Virus record (IMG/VR): IMGVR_UViG_3300050821_013430
Span: 62,001-126,000 of that record
DNA: 64,000 bases
Strand: one strand, 5' to 3'
Shown: piece by piece, positions 20,287-59,066 of the stretch
Layout of the letters: every line of letters starts with the position of its first letter
Position numbering within the stretch: the first letter of the stretch is position 1
The notes under the pieces: generated by a model
The model's input: the letters and a program-made list of their open reading frames with translations, nothing else
Database searches by the model: none
Told to the model about the DNA's origin: nothing
Made by a program: the position numbers and the translations under genes

Positions 20287-21153
20287 TTATACCTTACTAA
20301 GTATATTCCAAATACTACCATTAAATATAACAGTAATTCCGCCAAAATTAGTATTAATTACATAAGTAGAAGCGGCATCAATATTAACTCCACCTCCTGA
20401 TACTGTTAGATTATTAGTGGATGCAATACCAACGGAATCTTTAATTATATAAATATCTCCTGCCGATGGAGATGGCGGTAGTGTAATAGTAAATATTCCT
20501 GATGTCGTATCACCAAGAATAATATAATCATAAGCAGTTGAACGACCATTATTTATGGTATAATCTGATGTAATATTAACTATTTGACTAAATCGTAGTC
20601 CCGTACTATTAAATCTAATATTTTTGCCTGTCAAACCTATTTGGGCAACATCAGGATTAGTGGATGCGTTAAAAGCATCTAATACAATTTCTTGTGCATT
20701 ATCATGCCCATAACCAGTTGTTAAATAGATAGATGCCTGTCCTCCACCATTTTGTGCGCCAGCATCTAGTTGAATATTATTACCACCGGCAGAACTTGAG
20801 GTCGGGGCACAACCACTAAAAATATTAATCGGTCCATTGCCACCGCCTCCAACTTGATCAGTAGATATTGTTAAACCGCTTGTACCATTTGTGCTTTGTA
20901 TTAAAACAGCGCTAGCATCTACAGTACCACTGTTGCCAGTTAAACCTATAACTATTGGATTTGGATATGTTCCAGATAAATCACCTCCGGCGGGCCCATC
21001 TGGTATTCCACTTGGTGTTGGCAATGGTTTAGATTCCCACTCATCATTTGTATTAATCCAAGTCAATACATAACCATCTTCACTCGCGCCTAGTATTTCT
21101 CGTTTAACCTGATTTCCTTGAATTGCATAAACGATTTTTCCGACATCAGACAT
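20287..21153 (-). CDS. Virion fibre/adaptor protein
   Basis: AIQG..DGYVLTW module, GGDLSGTYPNP, C-terminal domain shared with 630..2309. Confidence 0.65.
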   Translation of the reverse strand: MSDVGKIVYAIQGNQVKREILGASEDGYVLTWINTNDEWESKPLPTPSGIPDGPAGGDLSGTYPNPIVIGLTGNSGTVDASAVLIQSTNGTSGLTISTDQVGGGGNGPINIFSGCAPTSSSAGGNNIQLDAGAQNGGGQASIYLTTGYGHDNAQEIVLDAFNASTNPDVAQIGLTGKNIRFNSTGLRFSQIVNITSDYTINNGRSTAYDYIILGDTTSGIFTITLPPSPSAGDIYIIKDSVGIASTNNLTVSGGGVNIDAASTYVINTNFGGITVIFNGSIWNILSKV

Positions 21154-30194: not shown

Positions 30195-33100
30195 TCATCC
30201 TATTTGCATTATATTAATTGTCGAGCCTGTCGGACTTATACTTGGAGCAAATGATGATGGCACTACGGCCGGTCCATTATTAACCCAAGATAACCAAGTT
30301 GATATATTAACTCCTGATCCAATAGCTGCTATATATGAATTATCTACTTGTCCATAACCGCTACCACCAATACTAATCGCCGCAGATTGAGATATGGGGG
30401 TTCCAGAGCCTAATAAACCGGTAGCTCCTAAATATTGCATCATCATAATACCGTGCGTTCCAGATGGAACACCAGTATAATTTATACTGGTGTTAATTCT
30501 ATAGTAGCTATAGGTATTAGCAATGTCAGCATTATTGAAAGTTACATAAGAACACCCAGTAGTAACGGTGGTGGCGCCTATATTACCAATACTGATTTGC
30601 TGTCCGCCCCATTGCACTAATCTAAATGGGCCGCTCATTGCACCAGCAACGCTCCAATTGCCCGATGGCACCTGCATACCGGCCGTAGCTTGCCCTTGAT
30701 AAAAGTTACCCATCGGTGTAATGGTGATCTCATTAGGATTAGGTCCGGTGGCCGCTACCAATCCACCTATCAAATTGATATTGTTCGCGATGGCAACCGT
30801 AGCTCCTTGATTGAACCACCACATACCAGTGCCATTGACGCCAGCGGTGCCTGGGGGTCCTGTAACTCCAGTAGCTCCAGCAACACCGCCCGGGGAAACA
30901 AATGCGGTGGCCACAGCGCTTCCTACTGGAATATTACCCACATAACCCAAGTTCTGTAAGCCAACGGTAGGTACACCTGCCGTAGCTACCTGATAATAGC
31001 CTCCACTTGGTATGAAAATAACCTGACCGGCTTGTATCCAATAACCGGAAGGAATTTGTACAGAGATCGCATTAGCAACGCCAGTGGCGGGCTGAGTAAA
31101 GCCATAGTTAGTAGAATAAGCATTAATGCCACCAGCGCCAGTCGACCCATATGTACCTTGTGGGCCGGTTGAACCTTGAGGCCCAAGTGGGCCTGTGGCT
31201 CCCGTTGCTCCTGCAATGCCCCCTGGCGAAATATTACCTGTTGCTACGGCACTACCTACCGGAATGTTTCCTAGATAGCCGAGATTTTGCAGCCCAACCG
31301 TTGGCACACCAGCCGTAGCTACTTGATAGTAACCTCCGCTGGGAATGAAGACGACTTGTCCAACCTGTATCCAGTTACCAGAAGGGATCTGAACTGAAAT
31401 AGTATTGGCCGCACCAGTTGCTGGTTGGGTAAACCCATAATGAGTGGAGTAAGCGTTGATACCGGGAGCGCCAGTAACACCAGTAGCGCCTGCGCCTGGG
31501 CCCGCTCCGCCCGAGGGAACGAAGTTGAGGCCATAAGAGGCATAATAGTTGGTACCATTGAAGTATAGAGAGATGATGTCAACGGCTCCAGTACCAGTTG
31601 ATAAAGTGGGTGGCGTACCACCTACCCATTGAACGTTAGTTGGCCAGGTAACAGTCATAAAACCAGATCCGCCTTGAACTAGACGAAGTAGAAGACTGGA
31701 AACACCAACTGGATTAGTAAAGGTAAAGGTTGGAGAACCATTTAGAGTAATGGTTTGACGACTACCCACGCTCCAGTTGATATTGAATGTGCTACCGCCA
31801 GAATTACCGTTAGAAACCTCCTGCTCGAAATCCAGTGTTTGCAGATTGACAATATCGTGATTCTGAACATTGAGACTATCGCCGATTGCAATATTATTAT
31901 AGCCACTTGGGAAGCCACTATAAACCCCGTAGGATAAGAGATTGATTGAAGTGGCCTGTGGATTGAACGCTGAGAAGATGTTTAGTGGCACTCCAGTTAC
32001 AGCCTGTGGTAGCCTGAAAAGACCGGTAGGAGCAGCAGATCCGACATTGCCACCAAAGTAGAAGAAGACACCGGACGGAACCTGAATGGCTCCAGTCGCA
32101 TCTCCATGCAAGGAGCTAATATACGGAGTGGTAGCGGTAGAACTGGCTCCTTGTAGGTCTCCTGCTGGTAGGTAAATAACACCCGGAGTTGATTGAGAGG
32201 CTAAGGTAACGCCTCCGCCACCGCCACCAGTACCTGGTGGGCCCTGAGGACCGGTAGGTCCTGTAGCACCCGTAACACCAGGGCTGCCTTGCGCTCCCTG
32301 AGGACCTGTTGGACCTGTGACTCCTGTAACACCGGGCGATCCTTGGTTACCTTGAGGACCGGTGGGACCAGTAACTCCTGTAACTCCCGCTACACCTCCT
32401 GGTGAGATAAATCCAGCAGCTACCGCGCTACCTACTGGAATATTGGCGCCTGAATAGCCTAAGTTTTGTAGTGAGAAGGTGGGAACAGAACCGGAGGCGA
32501 CTTGGTAATAACCGCCTGAAGGAATAAAAACGATCTGCCCCGCTTGAATCCAATAGCCGCTTGGAATCTGGATTGCAATATCTGCCCCTATTGCTGGTTG
32601 TGTGAAACCTGCTGTAGTTGAATAAGCATTGATCCCAGGTGCTCCCGTTACACCAGTTACGCCTGGTGATCCTTGATTGCCCTGAGGGCCAGTTGGACCA
32701 GTGGCTCCAGTTACGCCCGGACTTCCTTGGGCACCTTGAGGGCCGGTAGGCCCTGTTGTTCCGGTTATACCAGGAGAACCTTGTGCTCCCTGAGGTCCGG
32801 TCGGACCTGTTACGCCAGTTACACCAGCAATCCCTCCCGGAGAAACAAAGCCCGCAGCCACAGCGCTTCCCACTGGAATATTGACGCCTGAGTATCCTAG
32901 GTTTTGGAATGAGAAGGTAGGGACTGATCCAGAAGCAATAGTGTAGTACCCGCCGGACGGAATGAAAACATACTGACCAATCTGAAGCCACTGACCCGAA
33001 GGAACAGTAAGAGGTATGGCTACACCGACTGCCGGTTGAGTAAAACCGTTGGTGGTGGAATAAGCATTGATTCCTGGAGCGCCCGTTACTCCTGTTGTTC

Positions 33101-36100
33101 CTGCTACTCCCTGTGCTCCTTGAGGTCCGGTAGGACCAGTAACTCCTGTTACACCAGGAGAACCCTGATTACCTTGAGACCCCTGAGGGCCAGTAGGTCC
33201 TGTAGCGCCCGTTACTCCAGGTGATCCTTGATTACCCTGCGGTCCTGTTGGCCCAGTGGAACCAATAGTACCAGTTGCGCCTGTTACTCCGGCAATACCT
33301 CCTGGTGATACAAATGCTGCGGATACCAAACTACCAACTGGAATATTGACTCCTGAATAACCAAGATTCTGCAAACTGAAAGTAGGTACAGAACCAGACG
33401 CTACTTGATAATAACCACCGGATGGAATGAAGACGATCTGATTTGTCTGGATCCAATATCCAGATGGAATCTGAATAGCAATATCAGCTCCTACTGCGGG
33501 TTGAGTAAAGCCTGCCGTAGTAGAATAGGCGTTGATGCCAGGTAATCCGGTTACACCGGTTACTCCAGGAGGACCTTGATTTCCTTGAGGTCCAGTTGGC
33601 CCTGTCGCACCAGTAACTCCAGGAGAACCCTGAATACCCTGATTGCCCTGCGGTCCGGTCGGACCTGTTACGCCAGTTACACCAGGGCTTCCTTGAATGC
33701 CTTGACTACCTTGTGGGCCAGTAGGGCCGGTAGCCCCCGTGACTCCAGGAGAGCCCTGAGCGCCTTGAGGTCCTGTGGGTCCTGTTGTGCCAGTTATGCC
33801 TGGACTACCTTGAGCACCTTGAGGTCCTGTGGGTCCTGTAACACCGGTAACTCCAGCCACTCCGCCAGGAGAAACAAACGAAGCAGATACCAAACTACCA
33901 ACTGGAATATTGGCGCCAGAATAACCAAGGTTCTGCAATGAGAAGGTAGGTACTGCTCCAGATGCAACTTGATAATAGCCTCCGCTTGGGATAAAGACGA
34001 TCTGGTTTGTCTGAATCCAGTAACCACTTGGAATTTGGACAATGATATCTGCACCAATCGCAGGCTGGGTGAATCCGGCGGTGGTTGAATAAGCGTTGAT
34101 CCCTGGCGATCCTGTTACTCCTGTTACACCAGGATTTCCTTGATTGCCTTGCGGCCCTGTGGGTCCCGTTGCGCCTGTTACTCCGGGAGAACCTTGGATG
34201 CCCTGTGAGCCTTGCGGACCGGTGGGTCCTGTGGCTCCAGTTACACCAGGACTACCTTGAATACCCTGTGAGCCCTGGGGCCCCGTTGGTCCGGTTGCTC
34301 CAGTCACTCCAGGAGAACCTTGATTGCCTTGCGGACCTGTCGGTCCAGTAGATCCTATGGTACCGGTTGCTCCTGTTACTCCGGCTATGCCACCAGGTGA
34401 AACAAAAGCAGCAGCAACAGCACTGCCAACAGGAATATTGACTCCAGAGTAACCGAGATTTTGGAATGAGAATGTTGGAACGGAGCCTGAAGCAATCGTA
34501 TAATAGCCCCCACTCGGTATAAAGACATACTGACCAATCTGCATCCATTGCCCACTTGGAACGGTAAGTGGAATAGCAGCTCCCACTGCTGGTTGCGTAA
34601 ATCCATTGGTTGTCGAATATGCATTGATTCCAGGCGCTCCAGTTACACCAGTAACTCCTGGCGAACCCTGATTACCTTGTGGACCAGTAGGGCCTGTGGT
34701 TCCAGTAACACCTGGTGATCCTTGCGCTCCTTGGGGTCCAGTAGGGCCTGTAACTCCTGTAATACCAGGACTACCTTGGGCCCCTTGAGGGCCTGTTGGT
34801 CCTGTATTACCCTGCGGTCCAGTTACTCCTGTAACACCGGCAACTCCACCCGGAGAAATAAAGCTTGCTGCGACGGTACTTCCTACCGGAATGTTGACGC
34901 CAGAGTAACCAAGATTTTGTAGCGAGAATGTTGGAACTGCTCCTGATGCTACAACATAATAACCTGCGGATGGTATAAAAACATATTGGCCAGCTTGGAT
35001 CCAATAGCCACTTGGGATCTGAATAGCGATATCTGAACCCACTGCGGGTTGTGTAAATCCTGCGGTAGTAGAATAAGCGTTGATACCTGGAGCGCCTGTG
35101 ACACCTGTTGCACCAGGTGATCCCTGATTGCCTTGTGGTCCTGTAGGGCCTGTAGTTCCAGTTACACCGGGGCTTCCCTGAGGACCTTGCGGCCCAGTTG
35201 GTCCGGTTTGACCTTGAATACCTTGTACTCCAGTAGCCCCTGTAACACCAGCGATACCACCAGGTGAAACGAAAGCAGCAGATACTGCGCTACCAACAGG
35301 AATGTTGGTTCCCGAATAGCCCAAGTTCTGCAAACTAAAAGTAGGCACAGATCCGGAAGCAACAACATAGTATCCACCGCTCGGAATAAAGACATACTGT
35401 CCGATATTGATCCAGTATCCGCTAGGTATCTGGATCGGTATCGCATTACCTACTGCTGGTTGCGTAAAGCCCTGAGTAGTAGAGTAAGCATTGATGCCGG
35501 GAGCACCAGTAATACCGGTTACGCCTGGGCTTCCCTGATTTCCCTGTGGACCAGTAGGACCTGTTGCTCCAGTGACACCAGGAGAACCCTGAATACCTTG
35601 ACTACCCTGCGGCCCCGTTGGTCCGGTAGCTCCCGTTACTCCGGGCGAACCTTGAATACCCTGAGATCCCTGCGGACCAGTCGGTCCGGTTGCCCCAGTA
35701 ACTCCGGGAGAACCTTGAATGCCCTGTGATCCTTGTGGGCCCGTTACGCCAGGTGAGCCTTGATTACCTTGCGGGCCTGTAGGCCCTGTTGTACCTGTGA
35801 CTCCTGCTACTCCTCCCGGAGAAACAAAACCTGCTGCTACTGCACTACCTACCGGGATATTGACACCAGAGTAGCCCAGATTTTGGATCGAGAATGTAGG
35901 CACTGAGCCCGATGCTATCGTATAGTATCCTCCACTAGGGATAAACACATACTGGCCGATCTGCATCCATTGACCAGATGGAACCTGAATAGGAATAGCG
36001 TTACCAATGGCAGGCTGAGTAAAGCCTTCAGTGGTTGAGTAGGCGTTGATCCCAGGTGCTCCCGTTACTCCTGGACTACCTTGATTTCCTTGCGGGCCAG

Positions 36101-37244
36101 TAGGTCCGGTGGCCCCAGTTACACCGGGAGAACCCTGAGGACCTTGAGGCCCTGTCGGACCAGTAACTCCAGGTGAGCCCTGCGGACCAGCTGAAGGTGA
36201 GCCAGGCCCAATAGGTCCGGTAACGCCTGGCGAGCCTTGAGGGCCTTGAGGGCCAGTTGCCCCCGTTACACCAGGAGAGCCCTGAATGCCCTGAGAGCCG
36301 GTTTGACCTTGAGGCCCTGTTGCTCCGGTTGCTCCTGCTACTCCGCCAGGCGATACGAATGCTGGCGCTATTGCACTTCCAACAGGAATATTGACACCAG
36401 AATACCCAAGGTTTTGCAAACTGAAAGTGGGAACCGCTCCCGATGCTACAACATAGTATCCACCACTTGGAATGAAAACATACTGCCCTATCTGGATCCA
36501 ATATCCACTGGGGATTTGGATTGGTATGTCAGCTCCCACTGCTGGTTGAGTAAATCCTTCGGTAGTAGAATAGGCATTGATTCCACCAACACCGGTAGCT
36601 CCCGTGACTCCTGGTGATCCTTGGTTGCCTTGAGGGCCTGTTGGTCCAGTTGCGCCGGTAACGCCTTGTGGACCTTGAGGCCCTGTCGGGCCGGTTGCAC
36701 CAGGATTACCTTGCGGGCCTGTGGGCCCTGTTGCGCCGGTAACTCCTGGACTGCCCTGATTGCCTTGCGGACCAGTAGGTCCTGTTACTCCTGTAACGCC
36801 AGGAGAGCCTTGCGACCCTTGCGAGCCAGCGGGGCCTGTTGGTCCGGTTGCACCGGTTACTCCAGGCGATCCTTGAATGCCTTGAGAACCGGTTTGTCCT
36901 TGCGGTCCTGTTGGACCTGTGGCTCCGGTAACGCCCTGAATACCTTGCTGACCTTGAGGACCGGTGGGTCCTGTTACACCAGGCGAGCCCTGATTTCCTT
37001 GCGGACCTGTCGGTCCGGTTGCGCCTGTAACTCCGTCCGCGCCCGTTGCTCCCTGAGGTCCGGTGGGACCGGTCGCTCCGGTGACACCAGGAGAGCCTTG
37101 GTTGCCCTGAGGTCCTGTAGGACCGGTGGCTCCGGTTACACCGGGACTGCCTTGAATGCCTTGCGGTCCAATAGAACCAGTAGAACCAATCGGACCGGTA
37201 GGTCCGGTAGCTCCAGGTGCTCCTCTTGCGTACCCTTGGCTCAA
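30195..37244 (-). CDS. Giant collagen-like fibre protein with 11 globular repeats
   Basis: [12 protein letters not shown] triplet tracts alternating with GINAYST..FTQPA..SPGG repeats. TTG start after GAAAGG. Confidence 0.9.
30880..36600 (-). repeat. 11 copies of a roughly 85-aa coding repeat within the giant collagen
   Basis: GINAYSTxxGFTQPA...IPSGxW...FIPSGGYY...QNLGY...SPGG counted 11 times in the translation. Confidence 0.9.
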
Positions 37245-42381: not shown

Positions 42382-43401
42382 CTACGCCCCGATAATTACG
42401 CTCTTATTGCCTTTTGCAGCCCCTCTGGGATTGACAATTGCCAAACCAATCTGCTCACTTACGACCCAGCCTAGTTTGAGCTGGCGGGGTTCGTCTGCAG
42501 GGAGAACTTCGATGTCTTGACGGATCGGCATAACCCCTAGAAATTCGGGATCGGCGACGCAATACACGGTTCCGGGGGGCACAATCTTGCTCACCAGGAT
42601 GTCAGCGCCCCAGATGTGAGCATACAGCCCAGTCTGAAGGATTTCGCGCATCGTGACGGGATCAACTTCCCCACCACCTACGCCCTGACCACCACCGCTA
42701 CCCCACTTGAGGATATCGGTAAACTCGTTGATGTTCATGAAGAACTTCGTGGTTACGAGGTCCCAGCGATCAACTTGAGCCTTTAGCTCAACGAGGTCGC
42801 GCTTGAGAAGACCCGCATCTGCGATGTCTTGCACTGTGTTTTCAACCGAAGCCGCTGCGTCAATGGCCGCAAAGACGTTAGCGTCTTCTTGTGCCATGAT
42901 TTCTTGACGAGCCTTCTGAACTGCACGGTCGATAACATTGAACCGACGACGCTTAACTTCCGAAATACGAACTGTGGGGTTGGCCACGATTTCGAACTCG
43001 GGAACCACAACGCGGTCACCGAAGACACGTGATTCTGGTGCGGTGCCGTTGCTGGAAACTACGACAGCAGCGACATCGATATCACGCTCATATGTCGGAT
43101 ATGCACCCTGACTAAGTGGATCAACCACGAGAGCCCGGCGAGCGATTCCATGATAGTCCAAGTTTCTGCGAATTGGATTCGCCATTGCTTGGGCTAGAGC
43201 AATTTTGCCTTCTTGGCTGCTGATGGCTCTGGCCATCAAATCATCACGATTTTGGTCAGAGAGGCTTGGTTGTCCCGCAAGACCTTGATTCGCCGGAACA
43301 TTCTCCTGAAGAATTGCAGCATATTTCGCCAAACATTGGATGGCGTCTTGGAGCGAGGTGGCATTCATTTGCCCCTGTCCGTTAAACATTTGATTACTCA
43401 T
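42382..43401 (-). CDS. Major capsid protein (HK97-fold)
   Basis: LAQAMANPIRRNLDYHGIARRALVVDPL, FEIVANP, EIMAQED, LKLGWVVSEQIGLAIVNP. Strong SD, own promoter and terminator. Confidence 0.85.
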   Translation of the reverse strand: MSNQMFNGQGQMNATSLQDAIQCLAKYAAILQENVPANQGLAGQPSLSDQNRDDLMARAISSQEGKIALAQAMANPIRRNLDYHGIARRALVVDPLSQGAYPTYERDIDVAAVVVSSNGTAPESRVFGDRVVVPEFEIVANPTVRISEVKRRRFNVIDRAVQKARQEIMAQEDANVFAAIDAAASVENTVQDIADAGLLKRDLVELKAQVDRWDLVTTKFFMNINEFTDILKWGSGGGQGVGGGEVDPVTMREILQTGLYAHIWGADILVSKIVPPGTVYCVADPEFLGVMPIRQDIEVLPADEPRQLKLGWVVSEQIGLAIVNPRGAAKGNKSVIIGA

Positions 43402-52298: not shown

Positions 52299-52652
52299 CT
52301 AAGCGGATTGTTTTGATTTCTTGGCATCTATCGTGGCTAAATACGCTTTCAACTCTTGATATTTGGCAATGCCTACTTTCTTTTTCTTATCTCTATGGTT
52401 ACATCCATCCGCATACAATAGCCCTAGAAAATAAGCCTTTTCTTCGGTATCGATAATATCGAAATAGTGTTCATTGATATTTTTGCATTTTCGCAACAAT
52501 GATCCTTGTTTGTGATGTTTGACTCCGGCGCGGGCCAACCTATCATCAATAACCCAACGACTAACGCCATATTGTTCGGCCAATTTGCACGAACTTATGC
52601 CTGTAAGATAGGCGTCAATAATTTCTTGCTCCGGAAGTTTGATATATTCCAT
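52299..52652 (-). pseudogene. Truncated LAGLIDADG homing endonuclease
   Basis: HTH and first motif KAYFLGLLYADG, but the second motif is missing. Confidence 0.7.
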
Positions 52653-52655
52653 TGA

Positions 52656-53348
52656 TTATAAAAATAGCAATTCTAGGAGTGAATTGGTAGGGGAAGGAGG
52701 CGCGGTCGTTATCGCAATACTTGGGTGAATTGGGCTCGGTCTTCGAGTCGTAAATAGTCCAATCTCACTCACATACAAGTTAGACCTAACGGGGTAGACT
52801 TGATTGGTTTCAAACTGATCTACCTGACAAAACATTCTTTGAAACCAAACCGTCATTCTACCGCTTCCCTGCGTGCTATCATCGCCCGGAATATTAGGTA
52901 CTTGATAGGTATAATTGACGACCGTTCGGATAGCGTTAGGGGTTCCCGTCCCCATTAGGTCATAATTGAGCGGAGTGCCTGCTGGGAAAATAACGACCCC
53001 ATTGATAGGTACCAATTGGACTGGTACTGTAGATACGAAACTATATGGCGCAACATAAGCATGATGCAGTTCCGCCTTGATATCCACTGGCGTGATAAAT
53101 TGGCCAGTAGTTGGATTTTGTACGCCAGCGGCTGGTACAGTAATGACTTCATTCCAAGCCACCGCTGTAAAAGCTCGAATTTTGATGTCATCGATAATAC
53201 CAATAGGGGAGGTGCCATCGGAAACGGTACCCATTACTTGATTACCGAGGACGGTAACGCTTGCAACTTGGCCTGGCTGAAACTCTGCCGAAGGATCGAC
53301 AATCATTGATGTAGGCAATCCATACCCACTCTGTATAATTCTTAGCAA
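52656..53348 (-). CDS. Putative capsid decoration/cement protein (paralog of 45660..46409)
   Basis: FQPGQ, PIGIIDD, DDSTQGSGRMTVW, LYVSEIGLFTT. Confidence 0.55.
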   Translation of the reverse strand: MLRIIQSGYGLPTSMIVDPSAEFQPGQVASVTVLGNQVMGTVSDGTSPIGIIDDIKIRAFTAVAWNEVITVPAAGVQNPTTGQFITPVDIKAELHHAYVAPYSFVSTVPVQLVPINGVVIFPAGTPLNYDLMGTGTPNAIRTVVNYTYQVPNIPGDDSTQGSGRMTVWFQRMFCQVDQFETNQVYPVRSNLYVSEIGLFTTRRPSPIHPSIAITTAPPSPTNSLLELLFL

Positions 53349-53400: not shown

Positions 53401-53595
53401 CTAATCCTCTTCTTCAAATAGTTTGGAACCATCCTCTTCCGTCGGAGGAGCATGCTCATCAAATTCTACAAGAAGCAAATCATCTGCGTCGTTCGCATCA
53501 TAATCAAAAGGCGTTCCTGTACGCAAGTAATTCTTTACCATTTGGTCAGGTGAAAGATTCTTGGTGTAAGGATCGCCTTTACTCGGCTTTACGCT
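53401..53595 (-). other. Open -1 frame (64 codons) continuing 53589..53984 past an A9 run
   Basis: Reads SVKPSKGDPYTKNLSPDQMVKNY...FEEED*. No SD before the internal ATG. Confidence 0.55.
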
Positions 53596-53984
53596 TTTTT
53601 TTTATTCGCCTTGGACTCTAAAATTTCAATGTCTTCGGGGCCTAATTCGATTACTTCCTCTTTTTCAGGCTCCAATAAACTCTTGAATTCAATGATATCT
53701 TTGTCAAACTTTTCTTTTTGAGGCTCTTTGAGAAGGCTCTTGAACTCAACAATTTCTGGTTTTTTGACTTGGGCCATTTTTTCCAGCAGTTTGGTTAGCA
53801 CTTCGGCCTCTTGATGGAAACCAGTCTCATCAAAAATCTCCGCCGCAGCATTGACAAAATCAGCCGCTTTGGTAATCTGATCATAATGAAACTGATTCTC
53901 GCGTTGATTAGCGATCAATCGTTCGTGCATACCTCTGGCCAATTCTTCCTCAAAACTGCCAGGCTTGAACATTTTGGTGCCCAT
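53589..53984 (-). CDS. Putative head/scaffold-associated protein
   Basis: AAEIFDETGFHQEAEVL helix module, EFKSLL repeat, ends in A9. Confidence 0.6.
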   Translation of the reverse strand: MGTKMFKPGSFEEELARGMHERLIANQRENQFHYDQITKAADFVNAAAEIFDETGFHQEAEVLTKLLEKMAQVKKPEIVEFKSLLKEPQKEKFDKDIIEFKSLLEPEKEEVIELGPEDIEILESKANKKKA

Positions 53985-53992
53985 TTCAGCCT

Positions 53993-54730
53993 TTATTTCT
54001 TGCTGGATTTGGATTTACTATCGGCTTTGCTCTTGGATTTGCTGTCAGACTTGGACTTGCTATCCGCTTTACCCTTGCCAAAAGGCATCTTTTTGCTGTC
54101 TTTCTTAGAGTCCTTTTTGGAATCCTTTTTTGAGTCTTTCTTCTTTTTCTTGGAATCCATTTTCTTTTTCTTGGCTTCTACTACGAAGCTGGCGATTTTA
54201 AGACTTAGCGAAGCGCTCTTCTCTAGTCCGATTTGGTCGAGTACGGCCGAAGCGGTTAGCAAGTGAGCTGCAGCCTTATCGAGGGCATCAGCTAATTGTG
54301 CGTCGCTTGCGTCCTGTTCATCGGCTTCCTGATCATCGGCACTAGACGAATCAGATGACTCATCTTTTGCTTCTTGATCATCGGCACTGGCTGAATCTTC
54401 TGACGATTCGTCCTTTGCATTGCCTTTATCATACGCGGGTGCGGCGGGATAGAGGCCTTTACCATCTGAAGCGCTCATCGAGGAAGATGATTCCTCTGTT
54501 GAGTGATCTTTGGCATTGCCCTTATCGAAGGACGGTGCTGCGGGATACAATCCCTTATCACCGTCTCGTACGTTTCCATCATCTGCTTTGGCAGAGCTGG
54601 ACTCGCTGCTTTTATCTTTGGCAGGAGCCGCATCTTCTGTGGCATACCGACTAAACAAGGATTTATTAGCGTCCAAGTTTTTCTTCATATCTGCAGCAAT
54701 AGTGTCTGCTAAACTAATCTTTGTCATCAT
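53993..54730 (-). CDS. Putative internal head protein with acidic middle and Lys-rich tail
   Basis: Two KGLYPAAPxxDKGNAKD copies, SADDQ repeats, KKDSKK tail. Confidence 0.6.
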   Translation of the reverse strand: MMTKISLADTIAADMKKNLDANKSLFSRYATEDAAPAKDKSSESSSAKADDGNVRDGDKGLYPAAPSFDKGNAKDHSTEESSSSMSASDGKGLYPAAPAYDKGNAKDESSEDSASADDQEAKDESSDSSSADDQEADEQDASDAQLADALDKAAAHLLTASAVLDQIGLEKSASLSLKIASFVVEAKKKKMDSKKKKKDSKKDSKKDSKKDSKKMPFGKGKADSKSKSDSKSKSKADSKSKSSKK

Positions 54731-54742
54731 ATTCTCACCTTA

Positions 54743-57700
54743 TTAGAAGAGTCTTTTGTTGGAGGTTGAAAACGCGGCTGTAAGTTGTGAAACTAAGTCG
54801 CCTTCTTGTTCGCTCACTACATCAGCCTGACTAACCAAACCTACTTGCGGTAGGCGTCCGGCTGATTTTTGAAGTAGAGGGGCATGACGTGCGATAACCC
54901 TTTGCATACCTTCGAAGGATTCATCATTCCACTTCATAATCGATTCCACTTCACTAGCGATGGCTGTCTTTTCGTTGGGAATCAATCCACGATTTGCCAT
55001 ATCATAGGCAACCTCATAAGAACGAGCCAACTTGACACGATACTTGTTCATTTCTTCGTCAGCCTGAGCTTTAGCATGCTCCTTAACTAATTCAGTAGCA
55101 AACTCTTTACCAGAAGGCCCTACTTCACCATAGAACTCTTTCCAGTATTTGACTGCAGCGGGATCGACACCATTAGCAACCAGAGCGTCCAGATCTTTGG
55201 AGCTGAGTTTACCTTCTGATACGAGTTGCTGAATCATTTCCGCCTCTTTACGAACCTTGGGAGGCATGGTAGCTACTTCTAGCATTCTATCATGTTTCTC
55301 TTCTAGATTCTCTACGACTTCCAAACCATCTTGAGGCTTGACATCGAGAGGTCCGGGCTCAGCACCACCCTTAGGATGGAAATCATAGAACACGGGGTTC
55401 CATTTGATATCTGCTGCTAGCTTGGTGCGAAGTGTTTCGCGAGCTGCACGAGATTCTAGTTCAGCTGAAACTACTTGACTACCGGCCGGAACCATTACTG
55501 TCTTTCCGTCTGGCGTAGTAACCTTGACCGCATCAGCATCATTCATGTCGCTGGCGCAGCTAACTGAACTTTCCTCACTTGACATAGCATCCGAAGCATC
55601 ATTGACTTCCTGATCAGCATCATCCGCATCAGCGTCATCTGCTAGATCATCTGCCAACATTGCATCGACCGCTTCATTTGCTGCAGTTGCTGTTTGGGTT
55701 GCGGCATCATCAGCAGCCAAACCGGCCTCGATTTCCGCAATTTCTTTGCCTGTATCACCAATCATAGCCATTAGTCCTAAATCCATATGATCTCCGTTGC
55801 CTTGTCGTAGCATTTCTGCTTCTTCTTCGGCACGCTTTACCATTGCTTGGGTACCGTGCGCGTATTTGACGAAAGAATCCATTACCTTGAAAAGGTTAGC
55901 CAGAGACACGTTAGCGTCTGTAATGGCATCATTTACCAACGAATTGACCAAATCTTTGGTCTTTTCATTGACAACACCTTTATCGTACATTCCTACGATA
56001 GTGCTGAGCTCCTGTTCGTGATCTTGTAGAGAAGCGATGCACTCCTTGAACGCTAGAATCAGCGCGCCATTTAGCTCTTTCCGCATACTATGAAGAGCGG
56101 CGGTGCTAACACGACTTGAATCTGATGCATCGTCTGCGGGAGACATTGCCGCACCTGGAGCTGAAGCCTCAGGAAGAGCGGGAGCGCCCATATCACCAAG
56201 ATCGCCCATCTCGGCTTTTTCGCCTAATAGTTCTTTGACCACTTCTGTGGCATCCGAAATACCATCGCGCGCCTTGTCGAGAGCTTCCATGGCCTTATCT
56301 TTGACGTTGCCATCTTTACCTGCATCCATTCCTGCGTCAGGAGCGCTGGATGCTTCTCCGGCGCCGCTATCCATTGGAGGCATAGCATTAGGGGTGCCAG
56401 CTGGGGGAGGCGGAGGAGCAGCGGCTTGACCACTCTTGATAAGTGATGATGTCTTTGCTGCACCGAAAGCCTTTACCTTGGCAAGTAAATCCTCACCGTA
56501 GGTCTTGGTACCGATTACATTGTGAAGCGCATCTGCACGCCCAGCAGAAATTTCATCTACCGAAGCAGTAAGAACTAACTCACCGTCTTGGAAAACTCTC
56601 CAAACACTCTTGCCTGGATTCTGAGCATTCTTGGTAAAACGAGCAGTAAGACCGGGCTTTACTTCTGCTCTTTGTAGTAATTTCTTGCGGGCAAGCTCAT
56701 CACTGGGCTCCGCTGAATCGGGAGAGGGGTGTAGTCCTTCGACATCTCCAATATCTGGGAAAGGCTTTTGACCTACCATTTGCTTGTCTTCTTTATTGCG
56801 AAGGTGTTCATTGAGAGGATCAATCTCATAGCGTCGCTTGCCGGGTGTTGGTTCATTTAGCCCACCACCACCCAGGAAGTAGCCTTCTTTCTTGGTCTCT
56901 TCTAGAGCGTCTTTGACCTTTTGGATGACTGCTGTCCGACGCATAGCCCTTTCTTCGGCTTCGGCGCGGGCTAACATCTTTTTTAGCTCCATATCGGATT
57001 TTCCTTCATGATGTGAATTGGGGTATAGCCCTTCAACATCACCAACTCCTGGGAAAGGCTTTTGGCCTACCATTTGTTTGTCTTCCTTGTCGCGAAGATG
57101 CTCATTGAGAGGATCTACCTCATACCGACGTTCACCTGGAGTGGGCTCATTGAGTCCGCCCCCACCTTGAAAGTAGCTTTGTTTCTGCATATCTTTTGAT
57201 CCCGACATAGTATCCTCTTTGTTGATAGTGGCTAATTTATCCAAATCTTTTTGCATTTCAACTAACCGTCTCTCAATAGATGCCTTGACTTGCATAAGTT
57301 CTTGTTTCAATTCGTTATTGGTTTCAGCGGCTAAAAACCTTTGAGACGGAGGCGCCAGGGTTTGGTCAGTGCCTGGAAATTCAGATTCAGGCATTGCCAA
57401 AGTCCCTGAGGACTGATTATATGCCGCTTCATTAGTATCTTTTTGCATTGAGGTGTTGATTTCCTCTAATTTTTCGAAGGCAGAATTGATATCTTGCCTA
57501 AATTGACCAAGATCATTAGCCTGAATATCAAAAGAGGTAGCATTACCGCTCCCGTCATCACGAGCAAGTCTAGCGGTAAATTGATTATCTGCCAACCTCT
57601 TCAATTGTTCTTGTTTAGTTTCTACATAAGCATTGAGAGTATTGGCTGCTGCAATGATGTGCTTGATATGAGCTTTTGGATCAGCACCATTGACTACGAT

Positions 57701-58393
57701 TGATAGTTCAATTGGATTGAGATCGATATTGATTTCACCATAGCATGATTTATTTCTCATGTGAGTGCAAAAGTCAGATTCGACCCGAGCTACATTACCA
57801 CAATCCGAACAAATGGCCCGACCTACCGCAGTTCCCATACTTACCGCAGTTTGATACCCAGTGGCTACTTTGCGAGCTAAATCTGGATAGTTGAATTTGT
57901 CGAGAGCGCACAATCCGATAACGCGCTTCAAATTACGATCATAATAAGTGTCTACGATAAAGCCACGAACATGATCTACAGAGCTAGATTTATGATCTAT
58001 ACAGAGGGGCTTACCAATCCACTTCTTATATGCTTTGACTAACTCTTCTTCTGGAAAGATATCACCATTAGCATTTTTATATGGCTTGATAGCCTTATCA
58101 CTACATACCCATTTCCAACTTCCATTACTCTTATCCCAAGAGGCAGTAATCGTTTTACCGAAACGATCTAGTTTTTGGGTTCCATCTTCATTGATAGTCG
58201 AGGCCTCGGCAGCGTGAAGCATGGCCGCTGAAAAATATAGAAAATCATTTGCTTTGGGGGCAATTTTCTTCAAATTCTCCGCAAATTTACTAAATTCTTC
58301 TAATTTTTGAGGATCAAGAACTGGAATTACGGTTTCAATACCCTGAACATTTTCTGGACCAATTTCCAGCGATTCTCCAAATTTAGCAAACAT
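54743..58393 (-). CDS. Prohead maturation protease fused to scaffold region
   Basis: NGDIF..GKPLCIDH..VRGFIVD..VSMGT..CSDC..FCTH..ELSIVVNGAD (HK97-type protease), long helical/acidic C-region. Confidence 0.8.
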   Translation of the reverse strand: MFAKFGESLEIGPENVQGIETVIPVLDPQKLEEFSKFAENLKKIAPKANDFLYFSAAMLHAAEASTINEDGTQKLDRFGKTITASWDKSNGSWKWVCSDKAIKPYKNANGDIFPEEELVKAYKKWIGKPLCIDHKSSSVDHVRGFIVDTYYDRNLKRVIGLCALDKFNYPDLARKVATGYQTAVSMGTAVGRAICSDCGNVARVESDFCTHMRNKSCYGEINIDLNPIELSIVVNGADPKAHIKHIIAAANTLNAYVETKQEQLKRLADNQFTARLARDDGSGNATSFDIQANDLGQFRQDINSAFEKLEEINTSMQKDTNEAAYNQSSGTLAMPESEFPGTDQTLAPPSQRFLAAETNNELKQELMQVKASIERRLVEMQKDLDKLATINKEDTMSGSKDMQKQSYFQGGGGLNEPTPGERRYEVDPLNEHLRDKEDKQMVGQKPFPGVGDVEGLYPNSHHEGKSDMELKKMLARAEAEERAMRRTAVIQKVKDALEETKKEGYFLGGGGLNEPTPGKRRYEIDPLNEHLRNKEDKQMVGQKPFPDIGDVEGLHPSPDSAEPSDELARKKLLQRAEVKPGLTARFTKNAQNPGKSVWRVFQDGELVLTASVDEISAGRADALHNVIGTKTYGEDLLAKVKAFGAAKTSSLIKSGQAAAPPPPPAGTPNAMPPMDSGAGEASSAPDAGMDAGKDGNVKDKAMEALDKARDGISDATEVVKELLGEKAEMGDLGDMGAPALPEASAPGAAMSPADDASDSSRVSTAALHSMRKELNGALILAFKECIASLQDHEQELSTIVGMYDKGVVNEKTKDLVNSLVNDAITDANVSLANLFKVMDSFVKYAHGTQAMVKRAEEEAEMLRQGNGDHMDLGLMAMIGDTGKEIAEIEAGLAADDAATQTATAANEAVDAMLADDLADDADADDADQEVNDASDAMSSEESSVSCASDMNDADAVKVTTPDGKTVMVPAGSQVVSAELESRAARETLRTKLAADIKWNPVFYDFHPKGGAEPGPLDVKPQDGLEVVENLEEKHDRMLEVATMPPKVRKEAEMIQQLVSEGKLSSKDLDALVANGVDPAAVKYWKEFYGEVGPSGKEFATELVKEHAKAQADEEMNKYRVKLARSYEVAYDMANRGLIPNEKTAIASEVESIMKWNDESFEGMQRVIARHAPLLQKSAGRLPQVGLVSQADVVSEQEGDLVSQLTAAFSTSNKRLF
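56727..57175 (-). repeat. Two copies of a roughly 50-aa repeat within the protease/scaffold
   Basis: YFxGGGGLNEPTPGxRRYExDPLNEHLRxKEDKQMVGQKPFP occurs twice. Confidence 0.9.
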
Positions 58394-59066
58394 TTGTTTT
58401 TCCTATACGTTGTAAAAATTCTATATCGGTCAATTTACCCTTTTTTAAATTACAAATTTCGCATGCGGGTGCCAAATTATCAATAGTATGATCGCCACCC
58501 CGACATAACGGAATTTTATGATCTAAATGCAAATTTTCGCCCCTCTTTACACTTATAGAACAATAAGCACATTTATGATCAAAATTTTCGAGCAATTGAT
58601 CGACTTCATTTTGTCGAATACGTGGAAATTTATCGAGTCGCTTGCGGCGACGTCTATTATTTAGAAGAATAGAATCAATATTTTCCTCTCTATATTTTCT
58701 ATTTCGTTCTTTATGATATTCTTTATTATCTTGATACGACGATCTAACGCTTTCTAATCTCTCTTCACGATGTTTGGCATAGCTTTTCGAGGAAATCTCC
58801 TTGGCACGTTCTGGATTTTCTTTTCTCCAAATTCTTAGCCCTTCATTGATCTGATATTTATTTTCTTTTCTATATTCTTTACGATATTCATTATTATATG
58901 ATGGGTATGTTTTTCTATCCGCTTTATGCTCATCTCTATATTTTTTAGCGCATAATTTACATTGGGCGGAAAGGCCATCATCAGTATTTTTATTCTTATA
59001 GAAATTATCATTGGTCGCTTCTTTGCTTTGCTTACAAGTGCAACAAGTTTTTACAATGATAACCAT
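58383..59066 (-). CDS. HNH homing endonuclease
   Basis: CAYC..LDHKIPLCRGG..NLAPACEICNLKKG. Confidence 0.85.
   Translation of the reverse strand: MVIIVKTCCTCKQSKEATNDNFYKNKNTDDGLSAQCKLCAKKYRDEHKADRKTYPSYNNEYRKEYRKENKYQINEGLRIWRKENPERAKEISSKSYAKHREERLESVRSSYQDNKEYHKERNRKYREENIDSILLNNRRRRKRLDKFPRIRQNEVDQLLENFDHKCAYCSISVKRGENLHLDHKIPLCRGGDHTIDNLAPACEICNLKKGKLTDIEFLQRIGKTNVC

What the first reader, a model, noticed from the sequence alone, without database searches (positions are those of the whole stretch)
53401..53984. Candidate -1 frameshift or polymerase slippage at A9 in a head gene
The gene ends AAT AAA AAA AAA GCG TAA. A -1 shift in the A9 run opens 64 further protein-like codons that fill the gap to 53401, and the internal ATG of that frame has no SD. 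This would give short and long forms of the protein.
Basis: partly seen in the sequence, partly recalled or inferred. Interest (0 to 1): 0.6.

Follow-up and report, generated by a model that had tools for sequence, protein, structure and literature searches.

The report
Conserved poly-A recoding in phage head-gene
A small head-assembly gene of a 473-kb phage is broken by a frame change exactly at a run of nine A's. Twelve distantly related phages keep the same run and the same break, so it is almost certainly a programmed slip that makes a short and a long form of one protein.

Summary
The minus-strand gene 53984..53589 (131 aa) ends AAT AAA AAA AAA GCG TAA. The A9 run is at 53595-53603, and the -1 frame is open for 64 more codons to 53401.

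It is not an assembly error. A second assembly of the probable source run and a contig from an unrelated freshwater run both read A9.

Twelve divergent lineages share the design: the N part is 37-68% identical in the pairs measured, and synonymous sites in the tail are saturated in the nine compared. Each has a codon ending in T, then A9 (A10 once), a 0-frame stop 1-4 codons later, and a conserved tail in the -1 frame. All 36 Lys codons in the runs are AAA.

Other relatives carry the same tail in frame, usually next to a short tail-less paralog. The slip therefore replaces a two-gene system.

Nine A's rather than seven, no conserved downstream RNA structure, and the need for one extra A all favour RNA polymerase slippage over ribosomal -1 frameshifting. 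No RNA data cover the run, so this is not settled.

The protein is a helical hairpin with a short helix and an acidic tail, and sits between a prohead protease-scaffold fusion and a putative cement protein. It is probably scaffold-like, but that is untested. It is a new member of a known kind of recoding.

The parts
53589..53984 (-). 0-frame ORF, the short form (131 aa, P0001). It holds an N-terminal helical-hairpin domain (about residues 1-72) and a variable middle part with two FKSLL-type repeats, and ends KKKA.
   Evidence: The N-domain is conserved in all relatives. AF2 model of an in-frame homolog: helices 6-47 and 51-67.
53594..53604 (-). Slip site T-A9-G (A run 53595-53603). The T is the third base of the preceding codon, and the three Lys codons are all AAA.
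   Evidence: The same T-A9 run (A10 in L007) is present in 12 lineages. G follows the run in 10, T in L007 and C in L141. Lys codons are 36 of 36 AAA in the runs, against 127 AAA: 64 AAG elsewhere in nine of these genes.
53589..53591 (-). 0-frame stop TAA, one codon after the run. It ends the short form.
   Evidence: A stop lies 1 codon after the run in 10 lineages, 2 codons in L055 and 4 in L052. In the nine lineages where it was printed, the third frame also closes within a few codons.
53401..53595 (-). Tail in the -1 frame: 64 codons plus TAG (53403-53401). It is reached only by a slip in the run, and the long form is 194 aa.
   Evidence: dN/dS is 0.15-0.52 where it could be computed, with synonymous sites saturated. 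The same tail is in frame in about 20 relatives.
53500..53577 (-). Most conserved block of the tail (GDPYT..L[ST]P..MV.N....G..F.Y). It includes a short predicted helix, and Met 53541 lies inside this motif.
   Evidence: Alignments A2, A4 and A6. In the model of the in-frame homolog L023 the helix is at residues 86-96, with pLDDT 87-89.
54743..58393 (-). Context: a 1216-aa fusion of a prohead-protease domain and a long scaffold-like region.
   Evidence: phrog_18299, head maturation protease, E 6.6e-15 over residues 107-215. 33.9% identity to Bacillus phage G gp19.
53993..54730 (-). Context: a 245-aa protein with an acidic N part and a very basic K/S-rich C end. No family match.
   Evidence: Present at the same position in relatives.
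52656..53348 (-). Context: a conserved 230-aa all-beta protein (P0004), possibly a capsid cement or decoration protein. It always lies just downstream of the tail.
   Evidence: 55-71% identity in 33 loci. ESM Atlas features point to Phage_cement families at 0.94-0.95. The AF2 model is all-beta. Only weak matches to capsid accessory chains, Z 4-5.8.
42382..43401 (-). Context: the major capsid protein, about 10 kb further along the same strand.
   Evidence: phrog_2522, E 2.8e-80. 53.5% identity to Bacillus phage G gp27.

Best explanation
The A9 run is a programmed slippage site in a small head-assembly gene of a phage-G-like huge phage. Standard decoding gives a 131-aa protein: a helical hairpin plus a variable middle part. 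A fraction of products enters the -1 frame inside the run and gains a 64-aa tail with a short conserved helix and an acidic end, giving 194 aa. I think the slip happens mainly during transcription. On nine A's the RNA-DNA hybrid can re-pair one base back, the host RNA polymerase adds an extra A, and ordinary translation of the A10 mRNA gives the long form. All other run lengths end within a few codons and give short forms. The site would thus set a fixed ratio of tail-less to tailed subunits. Relatives achieve the same thing with two tandem paralogous genes, a short tail-less A and a tailed B. Shown: the anatomy of the site, its conservation, the homology of the tail to in-frame tails, and selection on the tail. 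Inferred: that two forms are actually made, their ratio, the polymerase as the slipping machine, and a scaffold-like role.
For: (1) Twelve lineages share one design: window; L007; L014 (also L043, L045, L046); L019; L049 (also L050, L051); L052; L053; L054; L055; L138; L141; L143/L144. The design is a codon NNT, then A9 (A10 in L007), a 0-frame stop 1-4 codons later, and the tail in the -1 frame, which is closed upstream by the TAA made from the T and the run. (2) These lineages are old. The N part is 37-68% identical in the pairs measured, the tail is 38-73% identical, and dS is saturated in every pair of the nine compared. Even so, 36 of 36 Lys codons in the runs are AAA, against 66% AAA elsewhere in nine of these genes. 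The base before the run is T in 12 of 12, although the amino acid there varies (N, D, A, S). (3) The tail is translated. dN/dS is 0.15-0.52 where defined. In the nine lineages checked, the first ATG/GTG/TTG of its frame lies at tail codon 11-21, inside or after conserved residues. About 20 relatives carry the homologous tail in frame behind the same N-domain. (4) It is not an error. A9 appears in a second assembly of the source run and in a different study's run. No assembly of any lineage has an in-frame run length. (5) On a tree of the neighbouring conserved gene, the seven frame-broken lineages that have a full copy of it need only one change of state, and sit beside a clade with two genes. 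Their N-domain is of the A type (E 1e-19 to 1e-27 to A paralogs, 1e-9 to 1e-12 to B), while the tail, and in L014 the FKSI motif just before it, match B. In L053 the short form (76 aa) is the size of an A paralog. (6) For the polymerase: the run is never shorter than 9, although a ribosomal heptamer needs only 7. The tail frame needs +1 base, the commonest product of bacterial RNAP slippage on runs of 9 A/T (PMC5009743). There is no conserved hairpin downstream and no conserved SD-like element upstream. L013 and L031 have an A9 at the homologous linker with the tail in frame, so a slip there would instead truncate the protein; this reverse polarity is also seen between tssM1 and tssM3 (PMC4256274). 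No phage RNA polymerase was detected with three Pfam models.
Against: No RNA or protein data cover the run. The only RNA contig found (X7) covers 53902-54052, and contigs cannot show minor variants. A AAA AAA in the 0 frame is also a legitimate -1 ribosomal shift heptamer, so translation may contribute or even dominate. The host and its polymerase are unknown, and divergent phage polymerases could escape the Pfam models. The KKK could be partly conserved for protein reasons. The scaffold-like role rests on gene position and a helical model only, with no family, PDB or PHROG match.
Confidence: 0.6

Rival explanations
1. Ribosomal -1 programmed frameshifting. With AAA AAA in the P and A sites, both tRNA-Lys slip back one base on A AAA AAA and translation continues in the tail frame. 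The mRNA stays A9.
For: The heptamer A AAA AAA is in the correct phase in all 12 lineages. -1 shifts are the classical route to C-terminally extended phage structural proteins, such as the tail chaperones (Xu et al. 2004, as cited in PMC2628397). Phage G, the nearest cultured relative, has an annotated joined CDS at GTA AAA AAG TAG in its head region.
Against: Nine A's are conserved where seven would do. No conserved downstream stem-loop or pseudoknot was found (50-nt folds, z between -1.5 and +1.0) and there is no conserved upstream SD-like element. The better shift site, A AAA AAG, is not in phase here; that A AAA AAA alone is weak in bacteria is my recollection and was not tested.
Confidence: 0.25
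2. Assembly or sequencing error. The true run is A10 and the gene is one continuous ORF.
For: Homopolymers are error-prone, and a single genome cannot exclude it.
Against: A second assembler on the source run and an unrelated run both give A9. L014-type and L049-type loci were assembled 4 and 3 times with A9. Twelve lineages with saturated synonymous divergence all show the break. L007 has A10, but its flanks are shifted so that the break remains.
Confidence: 0.02
3. A decaying gene. A frameshift mutation cut off the tail, which is now an untranslated relic.
For: The break sits in a Lys-rich linker where indels arise easily.
Against: The tail keeps its motifs and an open frame of 47-89 codons in 12 lineages, with dS saturated and dN/dS below 1 in the nine compared. 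A relic would have accumulated stops and lost the run.
Confidence: 0.03
4. Two independent genes. The tail is initiated on its own.
For: Gene callers list a 46-aa ORF from ATG 53541. Similar small ORFs were called in relatives.
Against: That Met is an internal residue of the conserved motif in the in-frame homologs. Conserved residues (KKS, GDP[YF]T) lie upstream of any start codon. There is no SD before the ATG.
Confidence: 0.03
5. DNA-level phase variation. Replication slippage makes A9 and A10 sub-populations of phage, each encoding one form.
For: Homopolymer tracts drive phase variation in bacteria and in some phages (poly-G tracts in Campylobacter phages, PMC2853527).
Against: None of about 20 assemblies of the 12 lineages has an in-frame length. 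A head needs both forms in one cell, which a mixed population does not supply.
Confidence: 0.05

Closest known systems
Citrobacter rodentium tssM1 (type VI secretion): transcriptional frameshifting at an A11 tract (PMC4256274)
   Same: A poly-A tract lies a few bases before a premature stop. Extra A's in the mRNA restore the frame to a C-terminal interaction domain. Short and long variants are made at a fixed ratio (20-25% long), and both are needed. A relative (Yersinia tssM3) has the tract in frame, so slippage makes the short form, like L013/L031 here.
   Different: It is a bacterial membrane protein with A11, and it is rare among homologs. Here the gene is a phage head-module gene with A9, kept across a whole clade, and nothing has been shown experimentally.
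Thermus thermophilus dnaX: slippage at a run of nine (review PMC5009743)
   Same: A run of exactly 9 A/T, RNA polymerase adds A's, and two products share the N terminus.
   Different: A cellular replication gene in which slippage yields the shorter product.
Phage -1 ribosomal frameshifts in structural genes: tail assembly chaperones G/GT (Xu et al. 2004, cited in PMC2628397) and T7 capsid 10A/10B (recalled, not checked here)
   Same: Late phage morphogenesis genes in which a minor, C-terminally extended form is made at a fixed ratio from one gene.
   Different: Those use heptamers, act in tail-chaperone or major-capsid genes, and are translational. This gene is neither of those, and its site is a 9-mer without a detectable stimulator.
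Nested protease/scaffold genes (lambda C/Nu3, Mu I/Z, KS10 gp28/29; PMC2628397, PMC4378225)
   Same: Head-assembly proteins made in two overlapping forms from one locus, in the same place in the head module.
   Different: Those share the C terminus through an internal in-frame start. Here the forms share the N terminus through a frame change.
The two-paralog arrangement in related huge phages (this work: L004-L035, L142, L145, L146)
   Same: The same N-domain and the same tail, with a tail-less and a tailed protein encoded side by side. In L047 and L048 the stop and start overlap as ATGA.
   Different: Two genes and no frame break. The window's clade has one gene plus the slip site.

Membership tests
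Programmed transcriptional slippage sites (A/T homopolymers; dnaX of Thermus, tssM1, IS elements) | Homopolymer run of about 9 or more A or T in the coding strand | tested here: met
   A9 at 53595-53603. A9 or A10 in all 12 lineages.
Programmed transcriptional slippage sites (A/T homopolymers; dnaX of Thermus, tssM1, IS elements) | The alternative product needs an insertion or deletion of the repeated base, and the frames are arranged to use it | tested here: met
   One extra A gives the 194-aa form. In the nine lineages where both other frames were printed, they stop within a few codons.
Programmed transcriptional slippage sites (A/T homopolymers; dnaX of Thermus, tssM1, IS elements) | The run is conserved at nucleotide level against synonymous drift | tested here: met
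   36 of 36 AAA in the runs against 66% AAA elsewhere in nine of the genes; dS saturated.
Programmed transcriptional slippage sites (A/T homopolymers; dnaX of Thermus, tssM1, IS elements) | The mRNA is heterogeneous in run length while the DNA is not | not testable with these tools
   Only contigs were on hand, and the one RNA contig does not reach the run.
-1 programmed ribosomal frameshifting | Slippery heptamer X XXY YYZ in phase with the 0 frame | tested here: met
   A AAA AAA is in phase.
-1 programmed ribosomal frameshifting | Stimulator: a downstream stem-loop or pseudoknot 5-9 nt away, or an upstream SD-like sequence | tested here: not met
   Folds of 50 and 80 nt after the run in 9 lineages: z between -1.5 and +1.0 for 50 nt and no shared helix. 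The flanks do not align outside the coding motifs. Long-range or peptide stimulators were not excluded.
-1 programmed ribosomal frameshifting | A trans-frame peptide is made from an unedited mRNA | not testable with these tools
   Needs proteomics and RNA sequencing.
Phage scaffolding / prohead core proteins | Encoded in the head module between the protease and the capsid or decoration genes | tested here: met
   The protease fusion is upstream, the cement-like P0004 is downstream, and the MCP is on the same strand. The order is conserved in relatives.
Phage scaffolding / prohead core proteins | Small, mostly helical, charged protein with a C-terminal interaction element | tested here: met
   AF2 model of the in-frame homolog: two long helices, a short helix and a disordered acidic end, pLDDT 79.6. 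The fold is generic, so this is weak evidence.
Phage scaffolding / prohead core proteins | Present in proheads, removed or cleaved on maturation, and required for shell assembly | not testable with these tools
   No cultured member and no proteome.
Phage scaffolding / prohead core proteins | Sequence or fold homology to a characterised scaffold | tested here: not met
   No match in Pfam, PHROGs, a PDB profile search, Foldseek PDB or BFVD beyond uncharacterised homologs. No similarity to phage G gp20.
Tail assembly chaperone G/GT frameshift | Gene pair between the major tail protein and the tape measure protein | tested here: not met
   The locus lies in the head module. The neighbours are a protease fusion and a cement-like protein.

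The most novel reading that the evidence does not exclude
The T-A9 run may be a site where the host RNA polymerase is used as a molecular ratio-setter for phage head assembly. That would be a conserved, clade-wide case of transcriptional recoding in the morphogenesis of a dsDNA phage. It would also be evolutionarily interchangeable with a duplicated gene pair: A plus B in some lineages, one chimeric gene plus a slip in others, and an in-frame A9 with reversed polarity in L013/L031.
Probability: 0.5. Interest if true: 0.65.

Novelty: new member of a known kind. Interest (0 to 1): 0.55.

Why it matters
Gene callers split this locus into a 131-aa protein and a meaningless 46-aa ORF, so the tailed form is missing from the annotation of a widespread group of huge phages. 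Their capsid gene alone was found on 312 IMG/VR contigs.

If the slip is confirmed, it adds a head-assembly case to the short list of conserved recoding sites in tailed phages. If it is transcriptional, I found no report of such a site in dsDNA phage morphogenesis in four literature searches.

It also gives a natural experiment. The same pair of products is encoded by two genes in sister lineages and by one gene plus a slip here. That makes it possible to test directly whether recoding serves to fix stoichiometry.

In practice, the T-A9 motif, the nearby stop and the conserved tail form a simple rule for finding and correctly annotating these genes.

Tried and rejected
1. Nucleotide search of the locus against cultured phages: no match. 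P0004 by tblastn: no match. Only the protease domain and the MCP link the genome to Bacillus phage G.
2. Family and fold searches for the protein found nothing informative. These were Pfam and PHROGs on the window's proteins, PHROGs on 26 family members, a PDB profile search, Foldseek against PDB, BFVD (only uncharacterised homologs) and the ESM Atlas (unnamed viral clusters, scores below 0.9).
3. hhalign of the family against phage G gp20 was negative.
4. Complex prediction of the tail with the major capsid protein gave no verdict. It counts neither for nor against binding.
5. P0004 fold search: Foldseek found nothing. VIA-align gave at best Z 5.8, with several capsid accessory chains at Z 4-5, below a reliable level.
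6. Conserved RNA structure around the run: none was found.
7. Reads: only Logan contigs were served, so the run-length mixture in DNA or RNA could not be measured.
A natural in-frame homolog (L023) was folded instead.
10. Phage-encoded RNA polymerase was not detected with PF00562, PF04983 or PF00940; divergent enzymes may be missed. There is no phage tRNA-Lys among the 6 tRNAs.

Full report
**What is there**

The window is bases 62001-126000 of a 472,749-bp IMG/VR virus record. Its major capsid protein (window 43401..42382) matches phrog_2522 at E 2.8e-80 and is 53.5% identical to gp27 of Bacillus phage G. The genome is therefore a phage-G-like huge phage from soil.

On the minus strand, the ORF 53984..53589 encodes 131 aa and ends AAT AAA AAA AAA GCG TAA.
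- The nine A's are at 53595-53603, the T before them at 53604, and the stop at 53591-53589.
- Read one base back, the frame is open for 64 more codons down to TAG at 53403-53401.
- That frame is closed just upstream by the TAA formed from the T and the first two A's, so it can only be entered within the run.
- The third frame stops after five codons.
- The only ATG of the tail frame (53541) has no Shine-Dalgarno sequence before it.

The two predicted products are 131 aa and 194 aa.

**Is it real DNA?**

Only contigs of public runs were available. Logan's own assembly of the probable source run covers the whole kilobase with no difference. A 151-nt contig from a freshwater run of another study spans 53498-53648 with no difference and no gap. 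Both read A9. An RNA-library contig (X7) matches 53902-54052 but does not reach the run. The genome holds only two runs of nine A/T and none longer, so the run alone is not statistically striking.

**Comparative evidence**

Relatives were found in four ways.
- The conserved neighbouring gene P0004 brought in 33 related loci.
- A protein word search brought in six more proteins ending KKKA or KKKV, and DNA was recovered for five of them.
- A metagenome scan added replicate assemblies.
- A tail-based scan added three further lineages.

Twelve distinct lineages share the design: a codon ending in T, then A9 (A10 once, with flanks adjusted so that the break persists), a 0-frame stop 1, 2 or 4 codons later, and a conserved tail of 47-89 codons in the -1 frame.

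These lineages are far apart. The N part is 37-68% identical in the pairs measured. In the nine lineages compared, synonymous sites in the tail are saturated in every pair, dN is 0.23-0.89, and dN/dS is 0.15-0.52 where it can be computed. Three nucleotide-level features nevertheless hold:
- All 36 Lys codons of the runs are AAA, while nine of the same genes use AAA 127 times and AAG 64 times elsewhere.
- The base before the run is T in 12 of 12, although the codon there encodes N, D, A or S.
- No assembly of any lineage has an in-frame run length.

This is conservation of a nucleotide signal, not of a protein motif.

**The tail belongs to this protein**

In about 20 more distant relatives the homologous tail is fused in frame to the same N-terminal domain. 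The tail has three conserved parts: a block of the type D-P-x-T-x-G-L-T-P-x-K-M-V-x-N-L, an acidic D-D-L-L-N block, and a terminal F-E-D-E. The Met at 53541 is an internal residue of the first block. In the nine lineages checked, conserved residues lie upstream of the first possible start codon. The tail is therefore neither a separate gene nor a relic.

**Evolutionary setting**

Most relatives have two tandem paralogs: a short A of about 70-80 aa that is the N-domain only, and a B made of the N-domain, a linker and the tail. In L047 and L048 the two genes overlap as ATGA.

In the frame-broken lineages the single N-domain is of the A type: E 1e-19 to 1e-27 against A paralogs, but 1e-9 to 1e-12 against B. 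The tail is of the B type, and in L014 the FKSI motif just before the run matches the one before the tail of the L013 and L031 B paralogs. In the minimal case, L053, the short form is 76 aa, the size of an A paralog, and the long form would be the size of a B paralog.

On a tree of P0004, the seven frame-broken lineages that have a full copy of it need one change of state (79/86 support; 76% of bootstrap trees). They sit next to a well-supported two-gene clade.

L013 and L031, which are sister loci, have an A9 at the homologous linker with the tail in frame. A slip there would truncate the protein (306 aa down to about 213). The linker is thus a recurrent slippage site whose polarity differs between lineages.

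**Mechanism**

I favour RNA polymerase slippage for four reasons.
- The run is never shorter than nine, although a ribosomal heptamer needs only seven. Nine is the length at which bacterial RNA polymerase slips efficiently, and it matches the 9-10 bp hybrid (review PMC5009743).
- The tail needs one extra A, which that review describes as the most frequent slippage product.
- I found no conserved hairpin after the run and no conserved SD-like element before it.
- The closest worked example, tssM1 of Citrobacter rodentium, has the same layout. It gives 20-25% long form, both forms are required, and a relative shows the reverse polarity (PMC4256274).

No phage RNA polymerase was detected with three Pfam models, so a host enzyme is the likely actor. 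Against this, A AAA AAA is in phase for a ribosomal -1 shift, and nothing here measures RNA.

My estimates are: programmed recoding of some kind, about 0.85-0.9; mainly transcriptional, about 0.6; mainly ribosomal, about 0.25.

**Function**

The gene lies between a 1216-aa prohead-protease fusion (phrog_18299) followed by a highly charged 245-aa protein, and P0004. P0004 is a conserved all-beta protein whose Atlas features point to phage cement families, but its fold matches are weak.

An AF2 model of a natural in-frame homolog shows a helical hairpin, a linker, a short confident helix over the conserved tail block, and a disordered acidic end. No family or fold search names the protein.

I therefore propose, from position and shape only, that this is a scaffold- or core-like head-assembly protein whose tail is an interaction element, and that the slip fixes the ratio of tail-less to tailed subunits. 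A complex prediction of the tail with the capsid protein gave no verdict and is not used as evidence.

**Verdict**

This is a new member of a known kind (homopolymer recoding that gives two length variants), in a previously unannotated head-module gene family of huge phages. Which machine slips, and what the tail binds, remain open.

Noticed in passing
L013:3029-3946 and L031:2156-3073 (B paralogs of related phages): An A9 run (C-A9-G) sits at the homologous Lys-rich linker, but with the tail in frame. One extra or one missing A would truncate the 306-aa protein to about 213 aa. This is the reverse polarity of the window's site.
   Followed up: partly
L049:1495-1505 (inside the gene 1272-1877): A second copy of the motif T-A9-GTCTA lies about 75 codons into the gene, in another phase, so the gene reads through it. 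It almost repeats the motif at the real break (1862). A one-base loss there would end the protein just after the N-domain. It is not present in L052, L054 or L055.
   Followed up: partly
genome G000:C1:16644-16652 (outside the window): This is the only other run of nine A/T in the 473-kb genome. It lies inside a 376-codon open frame on the minus strand, and both other frames close within 4-23 codons.
   Followed up: no
L056:6590-6615 (Bacillus phage G, record 20589-20614): Phage G genes 22/23 ('endolysin') are annotated as a joined CDS. The short form ends GTA AAA AAG TAG, a classical -1 shift heptamer directly before a stop, in the region between the protease and the capsid gene.
   Followed up: partly
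window 52299-52652 and 58383-59066; L027, L032, L033, L035, L052, L053: Homing-endonuclease-like genes interrupt the head module at varying places. The window has an endonuclease-like ORF (phrog_4645) and an HNH endonuclease; L052 has a GIY-YIG gene and L053 a faint LAGLIDADG match. In L027, L032, L033 and L035 an unscanned ORF of about 250-290 aa, which I only guess is of this kind, sits between the tail gene and P0004.
   Followed up: no
window 54743-58393 and 53993-54730: The protease fusion holds two long internal repeats of about 75 aa, each ending in a G-L-[YH]-P motif. The next protein repeats a K-G-L-Y-P-A-A-P block twice. These may be a shared binding or cleavage motif of the head core.
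   Followed up: no
window 30195-37244: A 2349-aa ORF lies in a stretch with G+C of 0.47-0.55, while other parts of the window fall to 0.34-0.39. The composition is strongly mosaic.
   Followed up: no
window 53902-54052: A contig from a seawater metatranscriptome library (X7) is identical over 151 nt at the 5' end of the gene. This is either transcription or carried-over DNA of the same phage in a very different habitat.
   Followed up: no
window 42382-43401: The major capsid protein is 79-87% identical across the 80 best of 312 matching IMG/VR contigs, while the head-assembly proteins next to the slip site are only 37-68% identical.
   Followed up: no
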